DNA of 64,000 bases from Octopus sinensis (taxonomy: Eukaryota), in the NCBI RefSeq assembly GCF_006345805.1, contig NC_042997.1:27466001-27530000 (forward strand), written 5' to 3'. Below, in pieces: positions 2,029-32,632 of the stretch (position 1 is the first letter of the stretch; each line of letters begins with the position of its first letter). The translations under genes were made by a program, and so were the position numbers. The notes below the pieces were generated by a model. That model searched no databases, was not told the origin of the DNA, and worked only from the letters and a program-made list of their open reading frames with translations.

Positions 2029-2108
<80 letters not shown>

Positions 2109-2439
2109 TGTATGTATGTATGTATGTATGTATGTATGTATGCATGCATGTATGTATGTGTATGTATACATATGGCCCCAGTACATATATTTAGTTAATG
2201 TAGGATGAAAATATTATTACAAAGATAAATATAGCAGATAATATCATTGTAGTATATTTACTTACTGTAGATGTCTTCATTGTAATGTTCGAGTTCGATA
2301 ACTTGGCACAAAATGTAGAGTCGGTAGCTGTATACTATTATTATTTTCAACTTCGGTCGAATTGTTCTCTTCTCGATGTGATTGGCGATGTGATTGACAT
2401 TAACCTGTCCCGTGTTTGCTTATATATAGTATAAACACA

Positions 2440-7830: not shown

Positions 7831-10111
7831 TGTTTGATATCTGTTACTCTCGATACATGTTTTGGGAACACGGCAAGCTAACGGTTTTCCGTGTGTTCAC
7901 TATCTGTTCGTATCGGAGCTTCCAGCGCGAATACTAAGCAGTACAGAATGTCATTTCCAACTTTATGGCAGAGTGAATTGAGTCATGGTGAGTTTCTCAC
8001 GGATAGCGTCCAACTGATACAACTATCCTGTGTAGTCGACAAAATCAAAATCAAATAATGCGTAAAATTCAAATTGAAAAATGGAGACAATTTACCTATA
8101 GCATACTGTATGTGTGTGCGCGCGTGCGTTTGCGTGTTTGTGTGTGGGTTTGTGCGTGTGTGTGTGTGTGAGTTATTTGTAAGATTGCAGTTTACAGACA
8201 GGAATTGTTCTTTATATCTAGTTAGATGACATTCCATAATGTTGCAATAAGAATAAATCTTCTTCACCAACATTATTCGTATATATGTCATATGATGTTG
8301 TACGTTTGGTAAATTCTCATTAAAAAAATGATAGATGATTTAATTCATTCCATACAATAATATATACTACTGTATTCGTCTTGAAATAATTGAAAAAGGT
8401 ATATTGAAACGAATATTCTGTCTGGAAGTGTTAATACTTATATTTTGTGTTACCGAACCAAAAAGCACCTTCGTCAGTTCTCTGGTGAGCGATGAATTGA
8501 ACTACTTGCTTATTATATTAGCATATAAATGGCTGAGCATTCCTCAGACAGGCTTATATTTAGCAAAATGTTGGCGCGGATTCAGCGTGTCACGTTGTGT
8601 GATAATGCCGTACGTTTTAATTATCAGAAATGTCCATATTGCTGGTTTTGCACCGTCAACTTAATTTCACCTGGAATATCTACAATGGCCGAAGTCATCA
8701 AAAATAACATTAGCACAAGAAGGGGAATTGTACCCAAGAAACAAAAATTATCAAATACGACATAACACTGGACACAATTTAAGCATTCGGGTATATCAAT
8801 AGCTAAAAACAAATATAAAATATTCTTTATATCATTTATCACCAGTTACTATAAAAAAGTTTATGAATTTGAAGATTATATTCTCTTCATGCAACGCTGC
8901 TCATATGAACGGGCCTTATTCAAATATAATATTCGAAATGTGAAATAAAAAAATTGCTTTTTCTAACCATACACATGTACAATAATATTGAAATTAAATT
9001 TAGAAGTGTAATGTTTTTTTTAGATTTTTTTATTTCCGGTACCTGAGGATCAATCATGACCACAGACCCCACCCCCGTGCAATATATGGGTCAACAGGTT
9101 AGCATTATAATATCCTGTTCCTCTTAACACACATTACAAGAAATATGTCGGTCACAAGAAGTTCTTATTTACAATATGTGATAGATTATCGCCGGATTTG
9201 CAACTTCGACGGATAGATGCATTTCCGAATATCTTTGTTTGAAAAACAATAACAGGCTTTAGACAATGTAATTCCGCTTTGTATTCATTTTATATCAATC
9301 GCTAAAAACAAATATAAATTATTCTTTATATCATTTACCACCTGTTATTTTGAAAAAAGTTTGTGAATTTGAAGATTATACACTCTTTATGCAACGCTTC
9401 TCATATGAATGCGCCTTACTCAAATATCATATTTGAAATGTGAAAAAGTAGAAAAAAATCTGTCTAATCATACACAAACACAATGGTATTAAATTAAAAT
9501 TTAGAAGCGTAACGTGTTTTAGTTTCCGGTACCTGTGGATCAATCCTGACCACAGTCACCGCCCCCGTGATATGTGGGTTAGCAGGTTAATAAACTGTAA
9601 AAAAATCAATGTCCTGTTCCTTTTAACACATTTTAGAAGAATTATGTCGGTGACAAGAAGTTCTTATTTCCAATATGTGATAGATTATCGCCGGATCTGC
9701 AACTTTGACGGAAAAGTGCATTTCCGAAGACTTTTGAATCTCTACAATTTTCGTTGAATGACAATATACTTTGCACAATGTAATTCCGCTTTGTATTTAT
9801 ATTATATATAAGCAAACACGGGACAGGTTAATATCATTAAGAACGCCAATCACATCGAGAAGAGAACAATTCGACCGAAGTTGAAAATAATAATAGTATA
9901 CAGCTACCGACTCTACATTTATTGCCAAGTAATCGAACTCGAACATTACAATGAAGACATCTACAGTAAGTAAATATACTACAGTGATATTATCTGCTAT
10001 ATTTATCTTTGTAATAATATTTTCATCCTACATTAACTAAATATATGTACTGGGGCCATATGTATACATACATACATACATGCATGCATGCATACATACG
10101 TACACACATAC

Positions 10112-10144
<33 letters not shown>

Positions 10145-10152
10145 CACACACA

Positions 10153-10235
<83 letters not shown>

Positions 10236-11492: not shown

Positions 11493-11585
<93 letters not shown>

Positions 11586-11634
11586 TATATATATATATAT
11601 TATATATTATATATGTATATATATTTATATCTAC

Positions 11635-11671
<37 letters not shown>

Positions 11672-12167
11672 CTATATATATATATAATATATATATATAT
11701 TATATATATATGTGTGTGTGTGTGTGTATGTATATCTATAAATCTATTAAAGAGGCATATTACTCTACCTCCGGTATTCGAGTACTATTTTTTCCACCTT
11801 GTTTTGTATTTACGAGCTCACCCTGGTATATAAGTATATATGTATATATGCATAATCCCCTTTCCGTTCTTTCACTTTCTTTTTATTCGACTGAGACCCT
11901 TTATATCGACCACTATTAAAAATCTTAGTAATTGAGATATTTTACAAACAAAAGTTTTAGGTTTTGATTTCATTTTTTTTTGTTTATATTTGTGTTTTCG
12001 CGTATCACTTTGGTATTTGTCACTCATTCAACTTTCAGTAATAGAGTTCCGTAAAATATTTCGTCATACATTTATATATGCGTCGAAAGTAAATGAATTC
12101 TTTGATTAAGCTGATAAATGTCTCAAATCGAAAGTAACCTTGACAAAGATATATTTTTCTCTGACAG

Positions 12168-12695
12168 GTTCTCTCCAGCATTGTCATATTTCTATTCAAC
12201 ATCGCCTTTCTTGTATCATCGGCATCAATTCCAGACCAGTGTAAAATACCAGCCAATCTGAAGGTTCAGTACCAGACATTGTCCCGTGCAGCTATTGGCA
12301 ATAACTTTCTTCTACCAGTTGAAAGAGCTCCGGCCGGAAGTAAGCAGAACTCCCAGACAGACGGGGATAAAACTTGCCCAACGTCTCCTTCATCCAGCGA
12401 TATCATCCGTGAACGTTCAACCTGCCCTTGGTACCTGAACATTACCCATGATTCAACAGTTTTCCCTCCATCCCGCACCGAAGCCGTGTGTCGCTGTAAC
12501 GGCTGCTTCGATTCAGACAACAACCACGAATGTGTGATGGTATATACTCCAATGACTGTCCTTAAACGTACCGATGAATGTGTTGATGGACTGTACGTGT
12601 ATAAACCAAAAGTGATTGAAGTAGCCACAGCTTGTGCATGTGCACGAAAAGCCGACTCACGAAAAGGTGGAAGCAACGATGAATACGAGTCGTAA
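12168..12695 (+). CDS. IL17: IL-17-like cytokine copy A, main coding exon (first exon uncertain)
   Basis: Acceptor tttttctctgacag at 12167, then open frame VLSSIVIFLFNIAFLVSSASIP (signal-like) ... ERSTCPWYLNITHD...EAVCRCNGC...ECVMV...DECVDG...VATACAC; IL-17 cystine-knot pattern; 175 codons + TAA. Confidence 0.92.
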   Translation, partial: VLSSIVIFLFNIAFLVSSASIPDQCKIPANLKVQYQTLSRAAIGNNFLLPVERAPAGSKQNSQTDGDKTCPTSPSSSDIIRERSTCPWYLNITHDSTVFPPSRTEAVCRCNGCFDSDNNHECVMVYTPMTVLKRTDECVDGLYVYKPKVIEVATACACARKADSRKGGSNDEYES

Positions 12696-14156
12696 GAACG
12701 GATAGAATAACGATGTATAAATATGTAATCCAGACGTTATTCAATATTTTATGAAAGATTAAGTCGACCACCAAGTGGTTATCATAATTTGCAACATATG
12801 TTGCATAAAACACACATACAATTTTGCATCTTATATAATTGCATATTTTATAAATGAAGTAATAACATCATCATAATAATATATTAGTAAAATTTATTAG
12901 CTAAATGTTTTAAAATCTTTTGTCCCCTTAAATTGAATAATTTAATATTCAACTGTGCAACAGTATATTTATAAAAAAATAAAAAATACCCGAGTATCCG
13001 GTCATCGTGATTTATATCGTGAGTGTATATATTCATATAGCACATAGGGGCCCTATTGTAACAGATATATACACACGCATACATGCATGCGTATATTTAC
13101 ACATACATACCTATGCTTGCACTCATATATATCCATATGTTCGTAAATGCGTATGTAAACACACACACACACACGCACATATATATACTTAGAAACGTAT
13201 AATTACACTCATGCATACACATATACATAAATGCTTACATGCGTACGTGCATACATTACCTCTTCCGAGAAGGGCTTATTATTATTTTAACAATTTTATA
13301 AAATTCTTATTTATACAACGTATTAAAGGTTTATTATAATGCGTTCATATAATTTTTCGAAGTGTATAACTTCCCATATGCATAAGAAAGTTCGATATCT
13401 TTTCTTCTTCTTATGTAATGTTTTGTAATACAGTAAATAAAGAAGAGATATATAAATGTGTACTGAATTGTAATGGGATGCATAAGATTGAATAAAGTTT
13501 ATATTATAAATGCAGAATTGTTCTTTGTTTATTTCGTATTTTATATTTTTGATTTATATGCACGCGCACGTTAACTCACTCTAGGGATGAATGAAGAATG
13601 TCCAGGAGATATTGTTCATAAAATGCAAATATACAATCGAAACTGCTTGTGTTTTTCTCCTCTATACCCTACAACGGAAGGTGAAGGTTAACTGAGATTG
13701 CAATTGCATTTGGCGAAATACTGAGATACGGTCATTCGTTAAAACTATGCAATCTATTCAAAATGAATAATATAGTGCGCCAGCGTGATTACAGCCCTAG
13801 GGTTAAAACGCACATGACAATAATAAAAACAACAGCAGCAGCAACAAGAAAAACAACAATATAACAATAGCAATCTTAATAATGATGATGATGATGATGA
13901 CGATGATGATGATGATGATAATAGTGTGTGGAATGCTGGAGGGTAATGTAAAATTCATACCAGTGGTGATCGGAGCGTTGGGATAAATCCCATTGAAGCT
14001 ACAAAACTTCTTAAGACAACTGATGTCTTGCCAAAAGCAGCCTTATTGGGCACAGCGCATGAATTAAGGCAAATATTATCTGTCCGAGGTCCTTGTTGTG
14101 ACTTCACAGATAAGTAAAAACTCTGGTGCATTCTTACCTACAGTGTGTTACAAAGA

Positions 14157-14157
<1 letters not shown>

Positions 14158-14250
<93 letters not shown>
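14158..14250 (+). repeat. (TAA)n microsatellite at 5' junction of a Dong/R4 element
   Basis: Direct reading. Confidence 0.95.
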
Positions 14251-14251
<1 letters not shown>

Positions 14252-17200
14252 GATAATAAAGAAGTTCTTGAGGCCTTCTACCATGCCATATATTTCCCCA
14301 CAGATAAGTCTAGCACTGTACAAGCATACTTAAACTGGAGACAGAAACACCCTGAAGTAAGACCCTACATAGACAGTAACAAGCTTGCCAATGTTAGAAG
14401 AAACATTATAAAAAAGAAATTACTGACTGAAGTAGAGATTGATCAGGTTAGACAAGCAATATCGGATAAAATGAACGAAGCTGCAGCTAGAGAAGATAAT
14501 ACAGAGGAAATGATTATAGACCAGCCCAGGGCGGATAAAAACGAAGAGAGGATTGAAAGAGTTAGTATAAGTGATAGGCAAAGTGAAATACGCCATGAAC
14601 CAATCATAAATACTAAAACAGATGAGCATCAAATAGATAAAGAAAGTCACACAAATATTGACCCAACAGAACTACATGAGCTAAAAAATCAAATCATGAT
14701 TGAATGGCTGAAAATTAAAGAAACCAGCATGGATGAGCGTGATACACTTCCTAAAATCCGCAACGCTAACCAAAACATGAAAATAATTGGTAAAATCCGG
14801 CTTGCACTTAAGGATATAATTTCAGTTAATGATGTTGATATCACAAACCTCAACCACCTATACTATGCATCCGCGAAAATCTCAACGATCCTATGTGGTG
14901 TAAAGATTAGAAAACGGCAACAGTCCCACAAAAAGCCTTCTTGGCAAGAGCGTCTGCAACAACAAATTAAAATATTTAGATCTGACATTGAATATTTGAA
15001 AAACCTTAAGGCTCACAAGACTACCAAACCTACAAAAAACCCAAAAATTACTGAAAAAATACAATATGAAAACTATACTTGATATTGATGCCACCATAGA
15101 AACCATCAAACAAAAGGTATCTGCCAAAGCTGCCCGCATAGCGAGGTATGAAAAGCGTGTTAGATTTTTCAAGGACAACAACATGTTCAAAAATAACACC
15201 AAGAATTTTTACAGGAAGATAGGAAAAACAGCGTTACTGCAGGGTCTGTACCATCAAAGAAGAAGTGCAGAGATTCTGGAATAAAATCTGGGCAGAAGAA
15301 AAAAACACACAACGAAAGGTCCCTGGATTGACAGAATATCTACAGAACTGGACCCCTTAGAAGAGCAAAAGTGGGAGGGTGTCAAGGTAGAAGATATAAG
15401 ATCTGCTCTCAGGAGGTCAAGCAAATGGAAGTCTCCAGGAAAGGATAAAATTCCTAACTTCTGGCTGAATGCCTTCCCAGAGAGCCATGAACTGCTAACA
15501 GAACTGTACAATGATGTTTTGCAACACCCTAGTAGGATGCCTCCTTGGCTAGTTAATGGGTTAACATTCCTGTTTCCAAAACGTGAAGAAACAAATGAAC
15601 CAAAAAACTATAGACCCATAACCTGCTTAACAACTATGTACAAAACACTAACATCTGTCCTGACGGAATATACCTATAGTTTTTTAACAGACAGCAGCAT
15701 ATTCCCTAATGAACAGAAAGGATGTAAACGTGGATCCTACGGCTGTAAAGACCAACTACTCATCAATAAGATGATCTTAGAAGATTGTCACAAACGACAC
15801 AAAAACTTATCAATAGCCTGGATAGACTATAAAAAGGCTTTTGATAGCCTACCACATAGCTGGATTAGGAAATGCCTTGAAATGTATAAGATAGCACCAA
15901 CTCTGCGAAACTTCTTGACTGTAAGTATGAGATCATGGAGAACCACACTAACTCTGAACAGTGACAGTGAATCCCTAAATGCTGGTGATGTAAAAATTTC
16001 GTGTGGCATTTTCCAGGGTGACTCACTGTCACCACTCCTCTTTTGTTTATCCTTAATACCTCTCTCAAAGCTGCTCAATGACGCGCAGTACGGGTATAAA
16101 ATGTTTGGTAACCATATAAATCATCTCGTTTACATGGATGATTTAAAGCTTTTTGCAAAAAATGATCAACAACTCAAGGGCTTACTAGCGATAGTCAAAC
16201 AATTCAGTGACGACATCAGAATGCAATTCGGCCTCGATAAATGTGCAAAGGCTACCTTTATCAAAGGAAAAATGACAGAAACATCTAACGTTAACCTTGA
16301 CCAACAGAATGTCATAAAAGAACTAGACCCAGCGGAGAGCTACAAGTACCTAGGGGGGTAATTGAGGGAACGGAATAAGGCATTCAGAGATGAAGGAAAG
16401 GATCAGGAGAGAATGCTATCGAAGAGTGAGAGCAATACTCAAGACAGAGCTGAATGCAAGAAACAGGATCGAAGCAATCAATGCATTAGCTATACCAGTC
16501 GTGACTTACAGTTTCAATATTGTTAACTGGTCAATTACTGAAATATGTCAGCTCGACAGAAAAATAAGGAAACTGTTGACAATGCATAGAATGCACCACC
16601 CTAAGGCAGATACAGAACGACTCTATCTGCCAAGAAAAGAGGGAGGCCGTGGTCTTTTGCAACTGGCAAAACAATGAAGATTGCTACAATTGGCCTAGAC
16701 ACCTACCTGAAAAACTCTGAGGACTGGATGTTAAAACTTGTCTCAAAACATGAAAACAAGAAAGCATCATACTCAGTCACAAAACAGGCAAAGGAATATC
16801 TAAGTGAATTCCGAATACAACCAATTTCGGAATTAGAGATAGATATACAAGAAACAAGCACAGAAAAAGCTAGGCGCATGAAAACCCGTGCCAAAACTGC
16901 GGCCTTAGATATTCTGAATAATAAATGGCAAGAAAAACCTCTCTATGGCAAATACCCAAAGAGAGCGAATAATGCAGATATCGACAAAGCCCTGACCCAT
17001 CAATGGCTAATGGCCTCTGGCTTAAAATCTGAAACAGAGGGGTTTATCATAGCAGCTCAAGATCAATGCCTACCAACAAGAAACTACCAGGCCAACATAT
17101 TAAAGATCAGAAGCAGTCCAACGTGTCGTGTATGCAAGCAACAAAATGAAACCATTGACCATGTGGTCTCCAAGTGCAGTCTTCTAGCGCCTACAGAGTA

Positions 17201-17915
17201 TCTCAACAGGCACGATAGAGCTGCACAATATATTCACTGGGTAATCTGTAAAAACCTGGATTTGCCCCATGAAAAAAACTGGTGGGAACACAAACCACCA
17301 CCCCAGTGCTTGAAAATGACCACATCTCACTCCTCTGGAACTTCACCATTCAAACTGACAGGAAGATAGATGCAAATAGGCCAGACATCATATTGAAAGA
17401 CTTCAAACAAAGAACATGCCTCCTCATTGATATGACTGTCCCAATCGATATAAACGTATCTGTCAAGACCTACCAAAAACTGAGCAAATATAAAGATCAT
17501 GAAATAGAAATCAGCAAAATGTGGAAGCTGAAGACTAAAACAATACCTGTTGTCATAGGTGCCCTGGGAATGATAGCAAAAGGGGCTGTTCAGCTACCTA
17601 ACTCAGATACCAGGAAACCCAAAATTGGCAGAAGTTCAAAAGATAGTGCTCATGGGAACTGCTCATATCCTACGGAAAATACTCTCTATGTAATCTCAAA
17701 GTTTAAAACAAACATAATTTTCGGTTTAAAAAAACAAAAAACAAAAAAAAACACTTTTTTTTAGACATTCATTAGTACAACATCCCCACCCCCCAAATAT
17801 ATGGCACACTAGGCATAACAACAACATGAACTTCCAACCCTGTTGTCTCTTGAGGTCTCTGGGTGAGACTTGGAGCCAACTTGTACAAATATAAAGCAAA
17901 AGTCAAAAGAATAAA
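14250..17915 (+). mobile_element. R4/Dong-type RLE non-LTR retrotransposon, family A, nearly full length, frameshifted
   Basis: Consecutive ORF pieces: RT (NYRPITCL, EQKGC, WIDYKKAFDS, GIFQGDSLSP, YMDDLK), CCHC knuckle (CRVC..ETIDHVVSKC), RHD motif, RLE (RPDII..K..LIDMTVP..KLSKY); flanked by (TAA)n on both sides. Confidence 0.9.
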
Positions 17916-17939
17916 ATAATAATAATAATAATAATAATA

Positions 17940-18014
<75 letters not shown>

Positions 18015-18016
<2 letters not shown>

Positions 18017-20255
18017 GCTCACGAAGGGGAAAACCATCTTAATTCCCAAATCAAATGAAACAACAAAACCAGAAAACTACAGACCAATAACCTGCCTCCC
18101 TACTATGTTCAAGGCATTTACTGCAGTGATATCGCAAAGGCTGAACAAGCACCTGGACGAAAACAAACTGTTCCCAGAAGAGCAGAAAGGATGCCGCAAG
18201 GGCTCATATGGCTGTAAAGATCAACTAATGATTAATAAAGCCGTAACTGAAGACAGCCACAGAAAGAAGAAAGGCCTCAGTATGGCCTGGATTGACTACA
18301 AAAAGGCGTTTGATAGCATCCCCCACACATGGATCCTCGAAACACCAGCCATTAACAAAGTAGCACCAACAATCATAAAATTCTATGAATAAATGGCAAA
18401 CAGTGCTACACCTCCAAACAAAAGAGGGACTCATGAAAACCAAAGACATCCCCATTAGAAGAGGAATATTCCAGGGAGACACGCTCTCTCCACTCCTTTT
18501 CTGCTTGGCACTGTCACCTCTATCTGATATGCTAAATAGAACTGGATGCGAATATAAATGTTACGGCAAAACGATCAGCCACCTTTTATATATGGATGGC
18601 CTAAAACTATACGCTGCAAATGACAAACAGCTGGAAACACTATTAAAGACAGTTCATGGATTTACCAAAGAAATAGATATGAAATTTGGATTAGAAAAAT
18701 GCGCCAAAGTAACCATGAAAAAAGAGGAAAACTAGTTAAGAGTAACAACATCATACTAGATAAAACCAATGAAATAAAAGAATTAGACCAAAGCCAAACT
18801 TACAAATACTTAGGAATCCATGAACTAGATAAGACACAACACACACACAAATGAAAGAGAAAATAAAAAAAGAATATTATAGACGAGTTAGATCAATACT
18901 AAAAACAGAGCTCAATGCTAAAAACAAGATAATAGGTATTAACACTTTAGCTGTCCCAGTTATAAGTTACAGCTACAATATCCTTAACTGGACACGAAAT
19001 GAACTGTCCAAAATAGATAGGAAAATAAGAAAAATACTGACAGGATCTAGGATGCATCACCCAAAATCTGACATAGAAAGACTATATATACAACGTATAG
19101 AAGGTGGTAGAGGCCTTATACAGCTGGAAAACTACTATAAAATAACCACCATAGGACTGCAAAAATACCTACTTCAGAAGGAAGGAAAACTGATCCAGAT
19201 AGCAGCAAAACACGAGCAAAACAAAAAAACTGTTCTCAGTATTTAAGGAAGCTGACAAATACAAACAAGAAATCATACCACCTAATAAACACAAAGAAGA
19301 AGAAGAAGATGATGAAGAAACAACAAAAGCTATAAAACAAATGAAATCCAAACTAAAATAGAACAGCAACGAGCCATGATAAAACGATGGCAAGAAAAGC
19401 CCCTTCATGGTAAATACTGCACTAAACTAAACGCAAAAGAAATAGACAAAGGAAAAATCCCAGCAATGGTTGAGAAGCTCAGGACTCAAAGCAGAAACAG
19501 AGGGATTTTTAATTGCAGCACAAGACCAAAGCCTCCCCACAGAAATTACCAAAACATGTAATGAAAAGAAATATTACAAGTAACTGCAGAAATGTGGAGA
19601 TGGACAAGAACAAACAATAAATCATATTATCTCTAGCTGCCCAGTCCTGGCTAAGAAGGAATATATTCACAGACATGACAGAGTTGGAACCTACATACAT
19701 TGGAAGCTATGCCAACATTATGGAATAACAACAGAAAAAAGATGGTATAGGCACACACCAGAAAAGGTCACAGAAAACGAGAAAGCAACCATACTCTGGG
19801 ATATGCCGATACACACAGATAGAGAAATTAAGGCCAACAGACCAGATATAGTTGTCAGAGATCATGAAGAAAAAAAATGCTTTCTAATTGATGTATCAAT
19901 ACCGGCAGATGACAACGTGTCTCTAAAGAAATGGAGAAACTCTCAAAATACAAAGACCTGGAAATAGAGATAACTAGAATGTGGAACCTGAAAACAGAAA
20001 CAATTCCTATCATAGTAGGTGCATTAGGCATGATAAAAAAATATTCAGACAAATACATAACTAAAACACCAGGACTTACAAACACATATAACATACAGAA
20101 AATTGCACTACTAGGCACTGCACACATCCTACGCAGAACACTTTCCATACAATAACCATCAGAGCATCACAGCAAATCACAGCACATACCCAAGGCACAC
20201 AGAGCTGCGCTCGGTAGTGAAGTGAAAGCACGCTATAAAAATAAAACTACTGAAT
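18015..20255 (+). mobile_element. R4/Dong-type element, family B, 5'-truncated
   Basis: RT motifs (GIFQGDTLSP, LYMDGLK), RHD and RLE pieces; 3' UTR ends in (TAA)n; roughly 96% similar to 25340-28140. Confidence 0.9.
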
Positions 20256-20308
20256 AATAATATAATAATAATAAAATAATAATAATAATAAACTGATAAT
20301 AATAATAA

Positions 20309-20345
<37 letters not shown>

Positions 20346-20389
20346 TAATAATAATATAATATAATAATAAAATAATAATAATATGTTGT

Positions 20390-20502
20390 GATGCATGTGC
20401 CTGGTGTACTCTTATCAGACGGGTAGTCATGATAGGTATATTGGGCTTCGTATATTTTACCCCAGTGTCACTTTGATGGCATGAACTGCTCTCTCACTCA
20501 AT
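20390..20502 (-). mobile_element. Fragment of the ~555-bp (ATT/TAA)n-embedded element
   Basis: Reverse complement of the first ~110 bp of 29062-29615. Confidence 0.7.
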
Positions 20503-20559
20503 AATAATAATAATAATAACAACAACAACAACAACAACGATAATAATAATAATAATAAT

Positions 20560-20990
20560 GCCTCCTCGTTGACATAACTCTTCCAACTGACATAAACGTA
20601 CCAAAAACTGAGCAACTATAAATATCTTGAAATAGAAATTGGCAATATGTGGAACCTCAAGACGAAAAGAATACTTGCTGCCATAGGGTGCCCTAGGAAT
20701 GATAGCAAAGGGGTTAATTGCTACCTAGCTAAGATATTAGGAAATCCCAAAATGGCAGAAATACAAAGGATAGTGCTCGTGGGAACTGCCGATATCTGCA
20801 TAATATATTGTGTATGTAATTTCAAATTTTAAAACAAACTCATAATCTCCTTATGTTTCTCTAACATTCTCTAGAACAATACTATGTGCGAAACCAAATA
20901 TATGATACCCTTGGCATAACACCAACAGGAATTTCTATGTTGTTGTCTCTGGAGGTCTCTGGGTGAGACTTGGAGCCAACTTGTACAAAT
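20560..20990 (+). mobile_element. Dong family A 3' fragment
   Basis: KLSNYKYLEIEIGNMWNLKTK and 3' UTR motif GGTCTCTGGGTGAGACTTGGAGCCAACTTGTACAAAT shared with 17860-17900. Confidence 0.8.
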
Positions 20991-21089
20991 GCAAAGCAGA
21001 AGTAGACTGACAGCAGAGCTTGAACCAATCTAACGCCACCACTCTAAAACATCGAAGCAGGTTGAGCCACAGTGAGAGAAGCTGATAAA

Positions 21090-21372
21090 CTGTAATTTTA
21101 CAACCTGGAACTAAGGTACGCCACTTATGTAATAATCTGCATATGGAAATCCCTATTAGGGCTAGTGTATAGTTTGAGTGTTATACAAATGTCAGAACTG
21201 GACGTCATTTAAGCATTTTATCTGATCAAATTCGTCCTATGGTTGTGGAACTGTTTCCGGAGGGAAACGCAATCTTTCAGTGTGATGATGCACCAATTTA
21301 CACAGTTAAACTTGTTACTGAATGGCACCAGGAACATTCTAGTGAAGTTGAACATCTTATCTGGCTACCTCA
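21090..21372 (+). mobile_element. Tc1-like (DD34E) transposase fragment
   Basis: [43 protein letters not shown]; mirrored at 23950-24205. Confidence 0.75.
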
Positions 21373-21403
21373 GTCTTTGGAAATAATTCAAAGTTTTTAT
21401 ATA

Positions 21404-23700: not shown

Positions 23701-24205
23701 TGGAAACAGCATAGAATATCAAACAAATTTATTGTAATAAGGAGTAGGACGGCCTTTGGCAGTAATTACACCTTCAATTCTACGAGGTATAGATTCATAC
23801 ATAGTTTGAATTGTTTCCAAGGGAATTTTTGTCCATACTTCAGCTAAAGCTGTCTCCAGTTCTTGGAGTGATGAAGGTGGAGGATATCGACTCTTTACAT
23901 CTCTTTCTAAAATCCACCATAAACTCTTAATAATATTGAGATCTGGGAACTGTGGTCACCAGACAAGATGTTCAGCTTCACTAGGATGTTCCTGGTGCCT
24001 TTCAGTAACAAGTTTAGCTGTGTAAATTGGTGAATCATCATCCTGAAAGATTGCCTTTCTCTCCGGAAACAGTTCCACAAACTTAGGATGAATTTGATCA
24101 GATAAAATGCTTAAATGATATCCAGTTCTAAAATTTGTATAACACTCAATGCCGAAATTACACACTAGCCATTATAGGGATTTTCATATGCAGATTATTA
24201 CATAG
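23700..24205 (-). mobile_element. Tc1-like (DD34E) transposase fragment
   Basis: FQDDDSPIYTAK...PDLNIIKSLWWILER...SIPRRIEGVITAKG.PTPY. Confidence 0.8.
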
Positions 24206-24399
24206 GTGGCGCGCATTAGCCCCAGGGTGTAAAGTTGCTGTTTTATCAGCTCTTCCCATGGTAGCTCAACCTTCGTCGAGTTTGCGAGTGGTGGCGATAG
24301 ACTGTTTCACGCTCTGTTGTCAGTCTACCACGATAAGGTAATGAAAGCTAAGAGCAGGAGTGCAAGTGGCTTAGAAAAAAGGTCATTCGTAGGGTCAAT

Positions 24400-25180
24400 A
24401 TAGCTTCTTAATTTTTTGAAGTAGCTTAGTATCCATCATGACTGTTGCCTGCATTTTGTTGCCATTTTGGTAATGGGCATATGAAATTATGCACCGTTGC
24501 ACATAATGATCCCCAAGTATTTAACTGCTAGTGAATCTGGGAATGCAGCGCCTTTGAATCCTGTATATACCGACTGCAGTGCATTACTAAGTTTACATTG
24601 TAGTGCCTGGGGGATGACGCATAGAATTTGACTTTCCTCAGAACGAGCAGCATCATTGTCTGCATCTGCGTCTATTGTGTCTTTAAGGACGTCATTCAGA
24701 CACTCTCCCAGTTTATCAACTATGCCAATGTCTCGCAGCTTACGACATTTCATGCAATCATCGACCTTATCGAATGCTTTGCAAAGTCAAGGTATATCAC
24801 ACTGACATCCGAATGCTCAAGCGACTGTTTGGAAACCCAGTCATAATGCTGTATGTGTTGTGTGAGGCAGCTTCCTCCTCAACGAAAACCATGCTGTGTA
24901 TTGTTAAGTAGGTTATTATCATTATTTTTTTAGGAACAATATCAGTTTCTTTCTGAAAATTCATTTCATATTTTTACTAACATGTGAAGTCAGAGAGATT
25001 AGCCTGTAGTTTTTGTCCTCTGCTCAGCGCCCACCTTTGTGGATAGGGCAAATAATAACTTCATTTAGCTATTCTTGAAGTTTACCCCATGCAAGAAAAC
25101 TCTGGAAAAGTATGTGAAATTGTTTTGATAAAGCTAGCTTACGTGACTTTAGGAGAATAGCTGGCAAGCCATCGAGACCA
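24400..25180 (-). mobile_element. Degenerate CR1/L2-like RT fragment
   Basis: VSVIYLDFAKAFDKVD..KLRDIGIVDKLGE at ~24700-24850. Confidence 0.55.
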
Positions 25181-25192
25181 TTATTGTTGTTG

Positions 25193-25258
<66 letters not shown>

Positions 25259-25263
25259 CATCA

Positions 25264-25339
<76 letters not shown>

Positions 25340-25343
<4 letters not shown>

Positions 25344-28140
25344 TAGTTTTATTTTCTATAGCGTGCTTTCACTTCACTACCGAGCGCAGCTCTGTGTGCC
25401 TTAGGTATGTGCTGTGATTTGTTGTGATGCGTAGGATGTGTTCAGTGCCTAGTAGTGCAATTTTCTGTATGTTATATGTGTTTGTAAGTCCTGGTGTTTT
25501 TGTTATGTATTTGTCTGAATATTTTTTTATCATGCCTAATGCACCTACTATGATATGAATTGTTTCTGTTTTTAGATTCCACATTCTGGTTACCTCTATT
25601 TCCAGGTCTTTGTATTTTGAGAGTTTCTCCATTTCTTTTAGAGAAACTTTGTCATCTGCCGGTATTGATACATCAATTAGAAAGCATTTTTTTCTTCATG
25701 ATCTTTGACAACTATATCTGGTCTGTTGGCCTTAATTTCTCTATCTGTGTGTATCGGCATATCCCAGAGTATGGTTGCTTTCTCGTTTTCTGTGACCTTT
25801 TCTGGTGTGTGCCTATACCATCTTTTTTCTGTTGTTATTCCATAATGTTGGCATAGCTTCCAATGTATGTAAGTTCCAACTCTGTCATGTCTGTGAATAT
25901 ATTCCTTCTTAGCCAGGACTGGGCAGCTAGAGATAATATGATTCATTGTTTCTCGTCCATCTCCACATATTCTGCAGTTACTTGTATATTTCTTTTCATT
26001 ACATGTCTTTTGGTAATTTCTGGTGGAGAGGCTTTGCTCTTGTGCGGTAATTAAAAATCCCTCTGTCTCTGCTTTGAGTCCTGAGCTTCTCAACCATTGC
26101 TGGGATTTTTCTTTGTCTATTTCTTTTGCATTTAGTTTAGTCCAGTATTTGCCATGAAGGGGCTTTTCTTGCCATCGTTTTATCATGGTTCGTTGCTGTT
26201 CTATTTTTATTTTGGATTTCATTTGTTTTATAGCTTTTGTTGTTTCTGCATCATCTTCTTCTTCTTCTTCTTCTTCTTCTTCTTCTTCTTCTTCTTCTTC
26301 TTCTTCTTCTTCTTCTTCTTCTTCTTCTTCTTCTTCTTCTTCTTCTTCTTCTTCTTCTTCATATTTATTAGGTGGTATGATTTCTTGTTTGTATTTGTCA
26401 GCTTCCTTAAATACTGAGAACAGTTTTTTGTTTTGCTCGTGTTTTGCCGCTATTTGAATCAGTTTTACTTCCTTCTGAAGTAGATATTTTTGCAGTCTTA
26501 TGGTGGTTATTTTATAGTAGTTTTCCAGCTGTATAAGGCATCTACCACCTTCTATACGTTGTATATATAGTCCTTCTATGTCAGAGCCTGTCATTATTTT
26601 TCTTGTTTTCCTATCTATCTTGGTCAGTTCATTTAGTGTCCAGTTAAGGATATTGTAGCTGTAACTTATAACTGGGACAGCTAAAGTGTTGATACCTATT
26701 ATCTTGTTTTTAGCATTTAGCTCTGTTTTTAGTATTAATCAAACTCGTCTATAATATTCTTTTTCTATTTTCTCTTTCATTTGTGTGTGTTATGTCTTAT
26801 CTAGTTCATGGATTCCTAAGTATTTGTAAGTTTGGCTTTGGTCTAATTCTTTTATTTCATTGGTTTTATCTAGTGTGATGTTGCTACTCTTAACTAGTTT
26901 TCCTCTATTCATGGTTACTTTGGCGCATTTTTCTAATCCAAATTTCATAACTATCTCTTTGGTAAATCCATGAACTGTCTTTAATAGTGTTTCCAGCTGT
27001 TTGTCATTTGCAGCGTATAGTTTTAGGTCATCCATATATAAAAGGTGGCTGATCGTTTTGCCGTAACATTTATATCGCATCCAGTTCTATTTAGTATATC
27101 AGATAGAAGTGACAGTTCCAAGCAGAAAAGGAGTGGAGAGAGCGTGTCTCTCTGGAATATTCCTCTTCTAATGGGGATGTCTTTGGTTTTCATGAGTCCC
27201 TCTTTTGTTTGGAGGTGTAGCACTGTTTGCCATTTATTCATAGAGTGCCCTATGAATTTTATAATTGTTGGTGCTACTTTGTTAATGGCTGGTGTTTCGA
27301 GGATCCATGTGTGGGGGATGCTATCAAACGCCTTTTGCAGTCGATCCAGGCCATACTGAGGCCTTTCTTCTTTCTGTGGCTGTCTTCATGTCTTCAGTTA
27401 CGGCTTTATTAATCATTAGTTGATCTTTACAACCATATGAGCCTTTGCGGCATCCTTTCTGCTCTTCTGGAAACAGGTTGTTTTCGTCCAGGTGCTTGTT
27501 CAACCTTTGCGATATCACTGCAGTAAATGCCTTGTACATTGTAGGGAGACAGGTTATTGGTCTGTAGTTTTCTGGTTTTGCTGTCTCATTTGATTTGGGA
27601 ATTAAGATGGTTTTCCCCTTCGTGAGACATTCAGGCATTGTCTCTGGCTCTGCTAGTATGTTGTTAATGTTTTCAGCCAGCTTTTTGTGCATTCCTGTTA
27701 GATATTTCAACCAGAAGCTGGGGATCTTGTCATGCCCAGGTGCCTAGTCTTTGCAGTGCCTGGGTGACCTCTTCAGTTGTTATGGGGGTCCAAAAATTGC
27801 TCAGATACTGAGTTTGTTGTTTTATTACTCCTTTTTGTTTTTGATTGTTAGTTCGCCGACCATATTCCTTTCCAGAATTCTTCCACTTCTTCTGCCGTTG
27901 GTGCTGCAGTGATTTCTATTTTATTTTTGCCAAGTTCTTGGTAGAACTTTTTGGGGTTGGAGTTGAAATGTTTGTTTTGTTCAAAGAAGCGCTGGCGTTT
28001 CTCGTACCGGCGGATCCTTTGTGCTTTGGCAAGGATATCTTGCTTCAGATTTTCTTTTATCTCAGGTAAATCTTTTTCTGTGATGGTATATTTCGGAGTA
28101 TTTTTGTTTTCTTTTTGTTGCTCAGTAGCGTTGATTGTCT
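25340..28140 (-). mobile_element. R4/Dong-type element, family B
   Basis: RT and RLE ORF pieces (25369-25632, 25677-26594, 26790-27080, 27324-27710); (GAA)n expansion giving poly-E; flanked by (TAA/ATT)n. Confidence 0.9.
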
Positions 28141-28165
28141 AATTTAATAATTGTTATTGTCTAAT

Positions 28166-28218
<53 letters not shown>

Positions 28219-28679
28219 TATTATTATTATTATTATTATTGTTATTACTATTATTATTATTATTATTATTATTATTTTATTATTATTATTATTATTATAT
28301 TATTATTATTATTATTATTATTATTCCTTTGTAGCACACTGTAGGTAAAAATGCACCGAGTCTTTACTTTTCTGTAAAGTCATAACTACCTCACACAGAT
28401 AATATTTGCCTTAACTCATGCGCTGTGCCCAATAAGACTGCTTTTTGCAAGGCATCATTCTTACATGGGATTTCCAGTTGCCTTAAAAAAGTTTTATAGC
28501 TTCAATGGGATTGAGCTCAACGCTCCGATAACCACTGGTATCAATTTTACATTACCCTCTCGCATTCCATACAGTCGTGCCATTTCCTCTTTCATGTCAT
28601 TTGGTATGTTCACATCAATGATCTGACAGCATTTGCCTCCCTTATTTAAATTGACATTATTATTATTATTATTATTCTA

Positions 28680-28831
28680 TGTTTGACTTTTGCTTTATGT
28701 CTGTACAAGTTGGCTCCAAGATTCACCCAGAGACATCAAGAGACAACAGGTTGGAAGTTCACGTTGTTGTTATGCCTAGTCTGCCATATATTTTTTTTGT
28801 TTTTTTTTGTGTTGTACTAGTGAATGTCTAA

Positions 28832-28862
<31 letters not shown>

Positions 28863-29000
28863 AAGTTTGTTTTAAACCTTGGGATTACATAGAGAGTATT
28901 TTGCGTAGGATATGAGCAGTTCCCATGAGCACTATCTTTTGAATTTCTGCCATTTTGGGGTTTCCTGGTATCTGAGTTAGGTAGCAATCATTCCCAGGGC
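28680..29000 (-). mobile_element. Dong family A 3' fragment
   Basis: PGNPKMAEIQKIVLMGTAHILRKILSM plus family A 3' UTR. Confidence 0.8.
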
Positions 29001-29001
29001 A

Positions 29002-29035
<34 letters not shown>

Positions 29036-29061
29036 TTATTATTATTATTATTATTATTATT

Positions 29062-29615
29062 GAGTGAGAGAGCAGTGCAAGCCATCAAAGTGACACTGAT
29101 TTAAAATATACGAAGCCCAGTACAACAATCATGACTACCCGTCTGATAAGGGTACACCAGGCACATGCATCACAACCATATGTGCGTGACATGGTGATCT
29201 CATATCAAGATAAACAACACATGACATTGCAGGTGGGGCCCAGTCAGAATTTTCTTCTGGTCGAGTAGCCCATCCCGCTCAAAAGGTCCCTGAATAAGGG
29301 TTGTTTAAGGATATTGAACGAAACACCCATGTTTCCAGAGGTGAATTATTCAAACCCCAAAGAATCCCTCTCAACACATGACTATGCTGCTCCCCCACTA
29401 CTTCTGCTCGTGATCAGAGCTGCACATATCGTCAGCCGCTAAGGGACATGCCCAACCGGTTAAGGTCAAACAACTGACAAGCAAATCTGTGGTATTGAGC
29501 AGAATATTTGCTGTAGCCCATCTTTTATACCAAGACAAAACAATGTACATGATAACACTTCCAATCAGTAAAGATCAGAAGCCACGAGGGCCACTGCCTG
29601 GTACTGCATCATGGC
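29062..29615. mobile_element. ~555-bp non-coding interspersed element embedded in (ATT)n
   Basis: Begins GAGTGAGAGAGCAGTGCA..CCATCAAAGTGACACTG; copies at 45676-46230 and 62141-62690, each flanked by (ATT)n. Confidence 0.8.
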
Positions 29616-29616
29616 A

Positions 29617-29662
<46 letters not shown>

Positions 29663-29806
29663 TATTATGATTGTCATTGTTATGATATTGTTATATTTTT
29701 GCTTTTGTTGTTGTTTCTGCTGTTATTTTTATCGTTGTCATGTGCGTTTGAGCCCTAGGGCTATAATCACGTTGGCGCACTAATATATTATTGATTTTGA
29801 ATAGAT

Positions 29807-30222
29807 TACTCTTTTACTCTTTTACTTGTTTCAGTCATTTAACTGCGACCATGCTGGGGCACCGCCTTTAGTCGAGTAAATCGACTCCGGGACTTATTCT
29901 TTGTAAGCCCAGTACTTATTCTATCGGTTTCTTTTGCCGAACCGCTATGTCACGGGGACGTAAACACACCAGCAATGCTAGGGGGACAGGCAATGCTAGG
30001 GGGACAAACACAGACACAAACACATACACACACATACATATATACATATGCATATATACGACAGGCTTCTTTCAGTTTCCGTTTACCAAATCCACTCACA
30101 AGGCATTGGTCGGCCCGGAGCTATAGCAGAAGACACTTGCCCAAGATGCCACGCAGTGGGACTGAACCCGGAACCATGTTGTTGGTTAGCAAGCTACTTA
30201 CCACAGAGCCACTCCTGCGCCT
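29807..30222 (-). mobile_element. tRNA-derived SINE family 1
   Basis: Head GGCGCAGGAGTGGC..TGTGG / GGTTCAGTCCC (A/B-box-like), tail (TAAAAGAG)n; absent from mirrored site near 13770. Confidence 0.85.
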
Positions 30223-30834
30223 ATTGCATAGATTTACCGAATGACCGTATCTCAGTATTTCGCCAAATGCAATTGCAATCTCATTTAACCTTCACCTTGC
30301 GTTGCAGAGTATACAGGAGAAAAACACAAACAGTTTCGACTGCATATTTGCATTTTATGAACAATATCTCCTAGACATTCTTCATTGATCCCTAGAGTGA
30401 GTTAAAGTGTGTATGCTTATAAATCTAAGATATAAGATACATAAGAAACAAAGAACAATTCTGCGTTTATAATATAAAATTTATTCAATCTTATGGATCC
30501 AATTACAATTCAACACATTTTTATATGTCTCTTCTTCATTTACTGTATTACAAAATATTATATAAGAAGGAAAAAATAAATTCGAAGTTTCTTATACATA
30601 CACGAAATTATACACTTCGAAAAATTATATGAACGCATTATAATAGACCTTTAATACATTCTATAAATAAGAATTTTATAAAATTCTTAAAACAATAATA
30701 AGCCCTTCCCGGAAGAGGTAATGTATGCACGTACGCATGTAAGCATGTATATATGTGTGTATGCATGTGTGTAATTATATATCTCTAAGTATATATATAT
30801 ATATGTATATGTGTATATGTATATATATATATAT

Positions 30835-31160
30835 GTGAAGGCGCATGGCTCAGTGGTTAGAGCGTCGAGGTTGTGAGCTCGAATCCCGGACCGGGCTGCG
30901 TGTTGTGTTCTTGAGCCAAGCACTTTATTTCACGTTGCTCCAGTTCACTCAGCTGTAGAAATGAGTTGCGACGTCACTGGTGCCAAGCTGTATCGACCTT
31001 TGCCTTTCCCTTGGATAACACTGGTGGCGTGGAGAGGGGAGGCTGGTATGCATGGGCGACTGCTGGTCTTCCATAAAAAAAAAACCTTGCCCGGACTTGT
31101 GTCTAGGAGGGTAACTTTCTAGGTGCAATCCCATGGTCATTCATGACCGAAGGGGTCTTA
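30835..31160 (+). mobile_element. tRNA-derived SINE, right arm only
   Basis: GGCGCATGGCTCAGTGGTTAGAGCG...CTCGAATCCCG head followed by CTTGAGC.AAGCACTTTATTTCAC core. Confidence 0.7.
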
Positions 31161-31572
31161 TTATATATATACGCATTTACACACATATGGATATATATGA
31201 GTGTAAGCATAGGTATTTATGTATGTAGGTATGTATGTGTGAATGTACGCATGCATGTATGCGTGTGTATATATCTGTTACACTCGGGCTCTATGTGCTT
31301 ACGTGAATATATACATTCACGATATAACTCACGATACCCGAATACATTTTAAGTGGACAAAATATTTTATTTCATTTGGCTAATAAATTTTACAAATATA
31401 TTATTATGATCATATTATTACTATATTTATAAAATATGGAATTATATAAAACATGTGTTTTATGCAACATATGTTGCAAGTTATGGTAACCACTTGGTGG
31501 TCGACTTAATCTTTCATAAAATATTGAATAACGTCTGGATTACATATTTATACATCGTTATTCTATCCGTTC

Positions 31573-32100
31573 TTACGACTCGTATTCATCGTTGCTTCCA
31601 CCTTTTCGTGAGTCGGCTTTTCGTGCACATGCACAAGCTGTGGCTACTTCAATCACTTTTGGTTTATACACGTACAGTCCATCAACACATTCATCGGTAC
31701 GTTTAAGGACAGTCATTGGAGTATATACCATCACACATTCGTGGTTGTTGTCTGAATCGAAGCAGCCGTTACAGCGACACACTGCTTCGGTGCGGGATGG
31801 AGGGAAAACTGTTGAATCATGGGTAATATTCAGGTACCAAGGGCAGGTTGAACGTTCACGGATGATATCGCTGGATGAAGGAGACGTTGGGCAAGTTTTA
31901 TCCCCGTCTGTCTGGGAGTTCTGCTTACTTCCGACCGGAGCTCTTTCAACTGGTAGTAAAAAGTTATTGCCAATAGCTGCACGGGACAATGTCTGGTACT
32001 GAACCTTCAGATTGGCTGGTATTTTACACTGGTCTGGAATTGATGCCGATGATACAAGAAAGGCGATGTTGAATAGAAATATGACGATGCTGGAGAGAAC
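31573..32100 (-). CDS. IL17: IL-17-like cytokine copy B, exon 2
   Basis: Same acceptor and frame as copy A; 6 nt differences in 528 nt by manual comparison, one amino acid change (A to V in APAGS/APVGS). Confidence 0.92.
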   Translation of the reverse strand, partial: VLSSIVIFLFNIAFLVSSASIPDQCKIPANLKVQYQTLSRAAIGNNFLLPVERAPVGSKQNSQTDGDKTCPTSPSSSDIIRERSTCPWYLNITHDSTVFPPSRTEAVCRCNGCFDSDNNHECVMVYTPMTVLKRTDECVDGLYVYKPKVIEVATACACARKADSRKGGSNDEYES

Positions 32101-32632
32101 CTGTCAGAGAAAAATATATCTTTGTCAAGGTTACTTTCGATTTGAGACATTTATCAGCTTAATCAAAGAATTCATTTACTTTCGACGCATATATACATTT
32201 ATAACGAAACACTTTACGAAGGTCTAATACAGAAAGTTGAATGAGTGACAAATACGAAAGTGATACGCGGTAATAGAACATCAACAAAATATAATAAAGC
32301 TAAAACCTAAAAACGTCTGTTTGTAGTATATATCGACTGTTTAGTTTTTTTTGTTTTTTGTTTTTAGCAGCGGTCGGTATAAAAAGTATCAGTCAATAAA
32401 AAAAAGAAAGAAAAAGGAAGTATACGTATATACTTATGTATGTACATGTATAGAGAGAAAGAGCAAAAGTGGGGCACGAATGGCGAGAATAAGCACATAC
32501 GTGCGAGCTTATAAATAAACAACTGGAGCGTGTCAAAAAGCGTCACTCGATATGAGGAGGTTACATTTTCTTAAAGGTAGGAGATTACATAGTTTTATAA
32601 TATTTCTTAAGATTCCGTACTTTGTTAGTTAC

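What the first reader, a model, noticed from the sequence alone, without database searches (positions are those of the whole stretch)
12077..12817. Sharply bounded gene-conversion-like tract covering the IL-17 exon in both P2 arms
Seen: A and B differ at 6 of 528 coding nt (one amino acid), and identity stays near 100% for ~90 nt of intron and ~85 nt of 3' UTR, then drops abruptly to roughly 80-85% (partner tract ~31455-32190). Near-identity at synonymous, intronic and UTR sites is not explained by protein selection. Inference: arm-to-arm conversion homogenises the cytokine.
Basis: partly seen in the sequence, partly recalled or inferred. Interest (0 to 1): 0.7.

Follow-up and report, generated by a model that had tools for sequence, protein, structure and literature searches.

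The report
Gene conversion homogenising octopus IL-17 copies
Neighbouring interleukin-17 cytokine genes in the East Asian common octopus keep overwriting each other's main coding exon, so the copies stay about 99% identical although the DNA around them split before two octopus species diverged; this is a clean new example of a well-known process.

Summary
The window is Octopus sinensis chromosome CM016859.1. Copy A (exon 2 at 12168-12695, +) and copy B (32100-31573, -) differ at 8 of 742 aligned bases across 12073-12814. That covers 95 nt of intron, 528 nt of coding sequence (6 differences, 1 amino acid) and 119 nt of 3' sequence. The adjoining flanks differ by 15-24%.

A third near-identical copy, D, lies just left of the window. 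A matches D to the left of 12073 and matches B to the right of 12640. All three agree within 0-2.3% in between.

The orthologous Octopus bimaculoides cluster settles it. In the intron flank (11740-12072) the tree is {A,D,OB3}|{B,OB1,OB2}, with 30 informative sites against 0 and 100% bootstrap. From 12073 onward it becomes {A,B,D}|{OB1,OB2,OB3}, with 46 sites against 0. Between-species dN/dS is 0.6-0.9, so protein selection cannot explain the identity.

The process is not specific to the P2 palindrome. It involves three copies here, and it also homogenises a direct-tandem trio in O. bimaculoides. This is a known mechanism at a new locus. Read-level confirmation and the O. vulgaris orthologue could not be obtained.

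The parts
12073..12814 (+). A-side high-identity (conversion) tract with copy B: 95 nt of intron, exon 2 and 119 nt of 3' sequence
   Evidence: 8 mismatches in 742 nt against 32195-31455. Permutation test gives 0/5000. The species-specific split {A,B,D} starts exactly at 12073.
31455..32195 (-). B-side partner of the conversion tract
   Evidence: Same alignment. All 8 A/B differences are unique to B relative to D.
12168..12695 (+). IL-17 copy A, exon 2 (175 codons plus stop): most of the signal peptide and the whole cystine-knot domain. RefSeq XP_029646807.1.
   Evidence: Translation. Pfam PF06083 IL17 at 61.2 bits against a cut-off of 24. P0037 and its gene span 8529-12695.
31573..32100 (-). 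IL-17 copy B, exon 2. RefSeq XP_036365846.1.
   Evidence: The exon 2 translation equals the corresponding part of P0001, including Val at codon 56.
12280..12640 (+). 361-nt stretch of perfect identity between A and the out-of-window copy D, ending sharply inside the coding sequence. The next 55 nt differ at 11 positions.
   Evidence: D is at L002 13382-13909, which corresponds to window -1100 to -1628 on the minus strand.
11740..12072 (+). Intron flank of A, of the ancient 'type I' lineage shared with D and O. bimaculoides gene 3. It is 21-50% diverged from B.
   Evidence: 30 informative sites support {A,D,OB3}|{B,OB1,OB2} and none support the species split. Bootstrap is 100%.
32196..32540 (-). 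Intron flank of B, of the 'type II' lineage shared with O. bimaculoides genes 1 and 2
   Evidence: B-OB1 is 15% and B-OB2 is 15%, against 23% for B-A. B and its upstream region are collinear with O. bimaculoides gene 1.
11934..21374 (+). P2 palindrome, arm A (tail-to-tail with B). Mosaic identity of 80-99%, interrupted by arm-specific insertions.
   Evidence: Self-BLAST and sliding identity.
23949..32334 (-). P2 palindrome, arm B
9951..9965 (+). Candidate canonical exon 1 of copy A (MKTST followed by a GTAAGT donor)
   Evidence: Identical 15-nt exon plus donor at D (2280-2266, -) and B (34805-34791, -). It matches MKTST/MKTSR of D and of the O. bimaculoides proteins.
34791..34805 (-). Candidate canonical exon 1 of copy B (MKTST plus GTAAGT)
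2266..2280 (-). Exon 1 of copy D (XP_029645913.1). Its exon 2 lies about 1.1-1.6 kb left of the window start.

Best explanation
D, A and B are old paralogues in an O. sinensis IL-17 cluster, arranged in alternating orientation (D -, A +, B -). Their introns and 3' flanks belong to lineages that separated before O. sinensis and O. bimaculoides diverged. That divergence is put at about 34 Myr ago in bioRxiv 10.1101/2023.05.16.540928.

Since then, non-allelic (interlocus) gene conversion has repeatedly copied the exon-2 region from one copy to another. An A-B event (or series of events) covers 12073-12814. An A-D event covers roughly 11964 to 12640. They overlap on most of the exon, so all three copies are within 0-2.3% of each other there.

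Shown:
- the tract and its edges;
- the mosaic of A relative to D and B;
- the switch from a trans-specific tree to a species-specific tree;
- near-neutral evolution of the protein between species;
- the same homogenisation in O. bimaculoides.

Inferred:
- The mechanism is repair of a break in one copy using a paralogue as template.
- The exon acts as the homology seed because it is the least diverged part of the old duplicates.
- The left edge is sharp because, upstream of 12073, the two intron lineages are too diverged for a heteroduplex to extend. The topology switches at the same point in both species.
- Scaling 1.1% tract divergence against 14.6% between-species intron divergence puts the last A-B exchange at roughly 2-8 Myr ago.
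For: - Tract and statistics.
- Triplet mosaic. Left of 12073 there are 81 sites with A=D and 7 with A=B. In 12641-12814 there are 2 against 21 (Fisher 1e-14). No site in 12073-12814 is unique to A.
- Unconstrained sequence. The 3' UTR and C-terminal tail are identical in A and B but 8.5-20% diverged in D. The intron left of 12073 is nearly identical in A and D but 21-36% diverged in B. Each pair's identity therefore runs into sequence that is demonstrably unconstrained.
- Cross-species. In the flank, 30 sites against 0 support {A,D,OB3}|{B,OB1,OB2}. In the tract, 46 against 0 support {A,B,D}|{OB1,OB2,OB3} (Fisher 8e-22). Both have 100% bootstrap under two aligners.
- Divergence in the same tract is 7-12% between species, against 0-1.7% for A-B.
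- dS(A-B) is 0.033, against 0.12-0.19 between species. Between-species dN/dS is 0.63-0.92.
- O. bimaculoides genes 1 and 2 differ at 0/55 in the tail and 2/119 in the 3' UTR, against 17-42% in their flanks.
Against: - No read-level or population data could be examined, so short-read polishing may have inflated the identity somewhat.
- The direction of transfer and the number of events cannot be resolved from 14 variable sites. The internal breakpoint within the core (12280-12308) rests on 12 sites, with a post-hoc Fisher p of 0.015.
- The LINE block at 18013-20383 is nearly as similar between arms (3.5%) as neutral-like sites of the tract (1.5%; p about 0.02-0.05). If that LINE was in the ancestral arm, the tract is less exceptional within P2.
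- The closest sister species, O. vulgaris, could not be compared.
Confidence: 0.85

Rival explanations
1. Recent partial duplication rather than conversion. A fragment of about 0.75-1 kb carrying exon 2 was duplicated recently and landed in, or replaced, the matching part of older paralogues. The tract edges would then be duplication breakpoints.
For: Sharp edges. P1 (A-D) is a younger duplication with about 5% substitutions, and its identity rises towards the exon. Gene order and orientation differ between species, so the cluster has been rearranged.
Against: The fragment sits in exactly homologous register inside older, still alignable paralogous sequence on both sides. Replacing homologous sequence in register is what gene conversion means. 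Two different, overlapping tracts (A-B and A-D) and the parallel pattern in O. bimaculoides would need several independent precise replacements.
Confidence: 0.06
2. Purifying selection on the protein, splice signals and UTR elements keeps A and B alike. The flanks simply drift.
For: The 95-nt intron segment and the 3' UTR are somewhat better conserved between species (7-12%) than the far intron (15%). A 17-nt palindrome in the 3' UTR is conserved.
Against: The same tract differs by 7-12% (non-coding) and 10-18% (coding) between species, with dN/dS of 0.63-0.92. Copy D has diverged 8.5-20% from A and B in the tail and 3' UTR. dS(A-B) of 0.033 is a quarter of the between-species dS, although the A/B flanks are older than the species split.
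Confidence: 0.02
3. Assembly or polishing artefact. Reads from the paralogues cross-mapped during polishing, or a collapse and re-expansion made the copies look identical where they were already similar.
For: The assembly is a long-read assembly of a repeat-rich genome, and no reads could be inspected here. Identity is highest exactly where cross-mapping would be easiest.
Against: - Fixed differences remain inside the tract, and each is shared with a third copy in a spatially coherent way.
- The arms carry private SINE/LINE insertions and indels, so they are not a palindromic read artefact.
- An independently produced O. bimaculoides assembly shows the same exon-centred homogenisation.
- Polishing could at most sharpen an already high identity. 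It could not create a species-specific clade with 46 supporting sites.
Confidence: 0.05

Closest known systems
Concerted evolution by interlocus (ectopic) gene conversion in clustered multigene families, for example primate gamma-globin genes and MHC or other immune-gene clusters (from general knowledge)
   Same: Paralogues are more alike within a species than orthologues are between species, over a short tract. The identity includes synonymous and non-coding sites. The flanks keep the older history. The tracts are mosaic and overlap among several copies.
   Different: The locus is an invertebrate IL-17 cytokine cluster. In the literature searched here, only expansion and tandem arrangement had been reported for it (PMC8353272; searches found no report of conversion). 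The protein evolves almost neutrally between species.
Arm-to-arm gene conversion in large palindromes, for example primate Y-chromosome ampliconic palindromes (from general knowledge)
   Same: Inverted-repeat arms with a spacer of about 2.6 kb. The exchanging genes are mirror images on the two arms. The exchange is intrachromosomal and non-reciprocal.
   Different: Here the arms as a whole are 80-93% identical and full of arm-specific insertions. Only 742 bp is homogenised. A third copy outside P2 takes part. The orthologous direct-tandem trio in O. bimaculoides behaves the same way, so the palindrome is not the essential feature.
Expanded tandem IL-17 clusters of marine invertebrates (Albertin et al. 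2015 as cited in PMC8353272; Saco et al. 2021, PMC8353272)
   Same: Two-exon IL-17 genes with a CPW motif, clustered on one chromosome in octopus. The repertoires appear lineage-specific.
   Different: Those studies interpret species-specific similarity as independent lineage-specific expansion. Here the flanks show that at least this subfamily's copies predate the species split and were homogenised afterwards.

Membership tests
Interlocus gene conversion / concerted evolution | Within the tract, paralogues of one species group together to the exclusion of orthologues | tested here: met
   {A,B,D}|{OB1,OB2,OB3}: 46 informative sites against 0, with 100% bootstrap.
Interlocus gene conversion / concerted evolution | Flanking sequence keeps an older, discordant history (orthologues group across species) | tested here: met
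   In the left flank, {A,D,OB3}|{B,OB1,OB2} has 30 sites against 0 and 100% bootstrap. B-OB1 is 15% against 23% for B-A.
Interlocus gene conversion / concerted evolution | Identity extends to synonymous and non-coding sites and exceeds chance | tested here: met
   0/95 in the intron, 2/119 in the 3' sequence, dS of 0.033. Permutations give 0/5000.
Interlocus gene conversion / concerted evolution | Not explained by constraint on the sequence | tested here: met
   The same sites are 7-18% diverged between species, with dN/dS of 0.63-0.92. Copy D is diverged in the tail and UTR.
Interlocus gene conversion / concerted evolution | Non-reciprocal transfer seen directly (shared polymorphism, variable tract ends in a population) | not testable with these tools
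   No reads or population data.
Y-type palindrome with arm-wide conversion | Inverted-repeat arms around a short spacer | tested here: met
   Arms at 11934-21374 and 32334-23949.
Y-type palindrome with arm-wide conversion | Near-identity maintained along the whole arms | tested here: not met
   Arm-wide substitution divergence is 6.15% and local values run from 1% to 21%. There are large arm-specific insertions.
IL-17 cytokine (Pfam PF06083) | Match to the family profile above the curated cut-off | tested here: met
   61.2 bits against a cut-off of 24, profile positions 1-81 of 81, for both copies.
IL-17 cytokine (Pfam PF06083) | Invertebrate CPW motif and conserved cysteines of the cystine knot; intact reading frame | tested here: met
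   STCPWY, CRC...C and CAC are present, with no stops in A, B or D. The CPW motif is described in PMC8353272.
IL-17 cytokine (Pfam PF06083) | Secreted and active as a cytokine through an IL-17 receptor | not testable with these tools
   Only a hydrophobic N-terminal segment is seen. No expression or functional data.

The most novel reading that the evidence does not exclude
Homogenisation here may be adaptive rather than a passive by-product. This IL-17 subfamily evolves almost as fast at replacement sites as at silent sites between species (dN/dS of 0.6-0.9), yet is kept uniform within each of two species. Conversion could therefore be the vehicle by which a newly favoured cytokine variant is spread across all copies, a 'multi-copy sweep' in a host-pathogen or ligand-receptor arms race. 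Under this reading the exon-limited tracts are retained by selection, because they leave the copies' different promoters and first exons untouched.
Probability: 0.15. Interest if true: 0.6.

Novelty: new member of a known kind. Interest (0 to 1): 0.4.

Why it matters
This is a clean, cross-species-validated case showing that 'lineage-specific expansions' of invertebrate immune cytokines can be partly an illusion created by concerted evolution. The copies are older than the species, but their coding exons are repeatedly reset.

That has three consequences:
- It affects how IL-17 (and similar) gene trees, duplication dates and orthology calls in cephalopods should be read.
- It gives a natural system with three copies, two orientations and two species for studying how tract edges are set by the surrounding homology.
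- It flags that short-read mapping and expression quantification cannot distinguish these copies within the exon.

Tried and rejected
- I looked for the O. vulgaris orthologue through four annotated O. vulgaris IL-17 proteins (L004, L005, L007). All are non-orthologous loci that share only repeats with the window.
- I tried to find independent transcript or read contigs encoding the spliced MKTST + exon 2 protein.
- I used pseudogene C, copy E and more distant paralogues as outgroups to polarise the A/B/D differences. At 23-30% divergence they are too distant to be decisive.
- I considered the 96.5%-identical inner arm block (18013-20383) as the 'true' arm age. I rejected it as a yardstick because it is a 5'-truncated LINE with different truncation points in the two arms, and a 98% identical copy sits at an unrelated O. 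vulgaris locus.
- I considered cDNA-mediated conversion or retroposition. I rejected it because the tract includes 95 nt of intron.
- ARAGORN found no tRNA-like structure in the B-specific SINE-like insertion.

Full report
**Identity of the sequence**

The window is 100% identical to Octopus sinensis assembly GCA_006345805.1, chromosome CM016859.1. Window position equals record position minus 27,466,000.

The feature is exon 2 of a two-exon interleukin-17-like gene. Copy A is at 12168-12695 (+), part of RefSeq XP_029646807.1. Copy B is at 32100-31573 (-), part of XP_036365846.1. Both match Pfam IL17 (PF06083) at 61.2 bits against a cut-off of 24.

The two copies lie tail-to-tail on the arms of an inverted repeat, P2. 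Its arms are about 11934-21374 and 32334-23949.

**Check of the observation**

An explicit alignment shows 8 mismatches in 742 nt between 12073-12814 and 32195-31455:
- none in the 95 intron bases;
- 6 in the 528 coding bases, of which five are in four synonymous codons and one is Ala/Val at codon 56;
- 2 in the 119 bases after the stop codon.

The longest perfect run is 296 nt (12486-12781). Immediately outside, divergence is 21% (11964-12072) and 15% plus a 12-bp indel (12815-12935).

I shuffled mismatch positions over the 3870 ungapped arm columns, which carry 6.15% mismatches. No shuffle reproduced the run or the 743-nt low-mismatch stretch (0 of 5000). The result held after removing codon positions 1 and 2.

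Further along the arm, identity is about 90% at 13179-13753. At 18013-20383 it is about 96.5%. That block encodes reverse-transcriptase fragments and ends in an (AAT)n tail. It starts at different 5' truncation points in the two arms. It also has a 98% identical copy at an unrelated O. vulgaris locus. It is therefore a young LINE and not a fair measure of arm age.

**A third participant**

The 90% protein cluster of copy B contains a third O. sinensis protein, XP_029645913.1 (copy D). Its gene runs on the minus strand from window 2280 to about -1628, so its exon 2 lies just outside the window.

The cluster is an array of genes in alternating orientation:
- E (+);
- D (-);
- A (+);
- B (-);
- a pseudogene C (+) at 43324-43843.

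D and A are head-to-head across a second palindrome, P1 (548-4950 / 11433-7266), with about 5% substitutions.

A three-way alignment gives the following pattern:

| Region (A coordinates) | A vs D | A vs B |
|---|---|---|
| Left of 12073 | 4-8% | 21-36% |
| 12073-12640 | 1.1% | 0-1.3% |
| 12641-12814 | 8.5-20% | 0-1.7% |

- In 12073-12640, B and D differ by 1.1-2.3%.
- In 12641-12814, D differs at 11 of the last 55 coding bases, which gives it a different C-terminal tail.
- Informative sites switch from 81 (A=D) against 7 (A=B) on the left to 2 against 21 on the right (Fisher 1e-14).
- A has no private difference anywhere in 12073-12814.
- A and D are perfectly identical for 361 nt (12280-12640), up to a sharp edge inside the coding sequence.

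Each pair's identity thus runs into sequence that another copy shows to be free to diverge. That excludes constraint and points to recombinational exchange.

**Cross-species test**

The best O. bimaculoides relatives form their own 90% cluster. They lie at CM046601.1 25.56-25.60 Mb as three genes, all on the plus strand. I call them OB1, OB2 and OB3.

Copy B and about 10 kb upstream of it are collinear with OB1 and its upstream region at 85-92% identity. The loci are therefore orthologous.

In a six-sequence alignment:
- In the intron flank 11740-12072, 30 informative sites support {A,D,OB3}|{B,OB1,OB2}, and none support the species split. B differs from OB1 and OB2 by 15% but from A by 23%.
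- From 12073 through the exon and 3' UTR, 46 sites support {A,B,D}|{OB1,OB2,OB3}, and none support the flank split.

The Fisher test for this switch gives 8e-22. Neighbour-joining bootstraps are 100% for each split, under two alignment methods.

In the tract, between-species divergence is 7-12% in non-coding sequence and 10-18% in coding sequence. A and B differ by 0-1.7% there.

So the copies belong to lineages older than the species split, put at about 34 Myr in bioRxiv 10.1101/2023.05.16.540928. Their exon region was homogenised afterwards.

The same happened independently in O. bimaculoides. OB1 and OB2 differ at 0/55 in the tail and 2/119 in the 3' UTR, but by 17-42% in the flanks. That trio is a direct tandem.

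**Selection**

Nei-Gojobori estimates give:
- dS(A-B) = 0.033;
- dS between species = 0.12-0.19;
- dN between species = about 0.11;
- dN/dS between species = 0.63-0.92.

The protein is weakly constrained or partly under positive selection between species. Purifying selection therefore cannot hold A and B at 99% nucleotide identity.

**Mechanism**

The best explanation is repeated non-allelic gene conversion among D, A and B. The conversion tracts are seeded in the exon, which is the best-conserved part of the old duplicates. On the left they stop where the two ancient intron lineages become too different.

The topology switches at the same base in both species. This suggests a recurrent homology barrier rather than the end point of a single event. 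That step is inferred.

Scaling 1.1% against the 14.6% between-species intron divergence puts the last A-B exchange very roughly 2-8 Myr ago. The perfect 296-nt and 361-nt runs suggest still more recent events. Both estimates are inferred.

The direction of transfer is not resolved. An internal breakpoint in A near 12280-12308 is suggested by 12 sites only (p = 0.015, chosen post hoc).

**Rivals**

- Recent partial duplication is hard to distinguish from conversion, because the replacement is in exact homologous register.
- Selection is contradicted by the between-species data.
- An assembly or polishing artefact cannot be excluded without reads. It is unlikely, given the coherent pattern of retained differences, the private insertions in each arm, and the parallel pattern in an independent assembly of another species.

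**Comparison with what is known**

Expansion and tandem clustering of IL-17 genes in octopus are known (Albertin et al. 2015 as cited in PMC8353272). My searches found no report of gene conversion or concerted evolution for them.

The process itself is textbook. The locus works like classic concerted evolution of clustered paralogues. It is not a member of the Y-type palindrome class, in which whole arms are kept identical. I therefore rate it a new member of a known kind, of moderate interest.

Noticed in passing
window 9951-9965 (+), 34805-34791 (-), 2280-2266 (-): An identical 5-codon first exon (ATGAAGACATCTACAG, MKTST) followed by a GTAAGT donor lies upstream of all three copies. It matches the N-termini of D and of O. 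bimaculoides proteins. The RefSeq models of A (start at 8529, MAEHSS...) and B (32885-32862, MKKYYSLE) use other first exons and may be mis-annotated or alternative.
   Followed up: partly
window 43324-43843 (+): A fourth IL-17 exon-2 copy (C), about 51% identical at protein level, has in-frame stops and a frameshift. It is a pseudogene continuing the alternating-orientation array.
   Followed up: partly
window 18013-20383 (+) and 28216-25203 (-): 5'-truncated LINE copies (reverse-transcriptase ORF fragments, (AAT)n tails) sit at mirrored positions in the two P2 arms with different 5' truncation points. A 98% identical fragment sits at a non-orthologous O. vulgaris locus (L007 5452-6036). They may be independent insertions into homologous (AAT)n sites or a second conversion tract. 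Further (AAT)n-tailed elements at 14260-18015 account for the strong AT skew.
   Followed up: partly
window 548-4950 and 11433-7266: A second palindrome, P1, lies head-to-head between copies D and A, with about 5% substitution divergence. The same sequence recurs at 80-85% identity beyond copy B (34742-36548), so P2 is the inner part of a larger, older mirror structure (about 8173-36548).
   Followed up: partly
L008/L009/L010 (O. bimaculoides CM046601.1 25.555-25.606 Mb) versus the window: The orthologous trio is a direct tandem (all + strand, about 10 kb spacing) in O. bimaculoides, but alternates in orientation in O. sinensis. The cluster has therefore been rearranged by inversions or inverted duplications since the split.
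   Followed up: partly
window 12789-12805 and 31463-31479: A perfect 17-nt palindrome, TTGCAACATATGTTGCA, lies in the 3' UTR just inside the right edge of the A-B tract. It is conserved or nearly so in five of the six copies compared, and it could form a hairpin in RNA or DNA.
   Followed up: no
window ~30842-31162 (arm B only); L002 12743-13178 (intron of D only): Copy-specific SINE-like insertions are absent from the partner copies. They show that the arms are independent, aged sequences rather than an assembly duplication. ARAGORN finds no tRNA-like structure in the B insert.
   Followed up: partly
exon 2 of A/B/D versus OB1-3: Between-species dN/dS of 0.63-0.92 with dN of about 0.11 means this IL-17 subfamily evolves unusually fast. 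Other IL-17 subfamilies have members at 90% or more protein identity shared by both species (clusters 2 and 3).
   Followed up: partly
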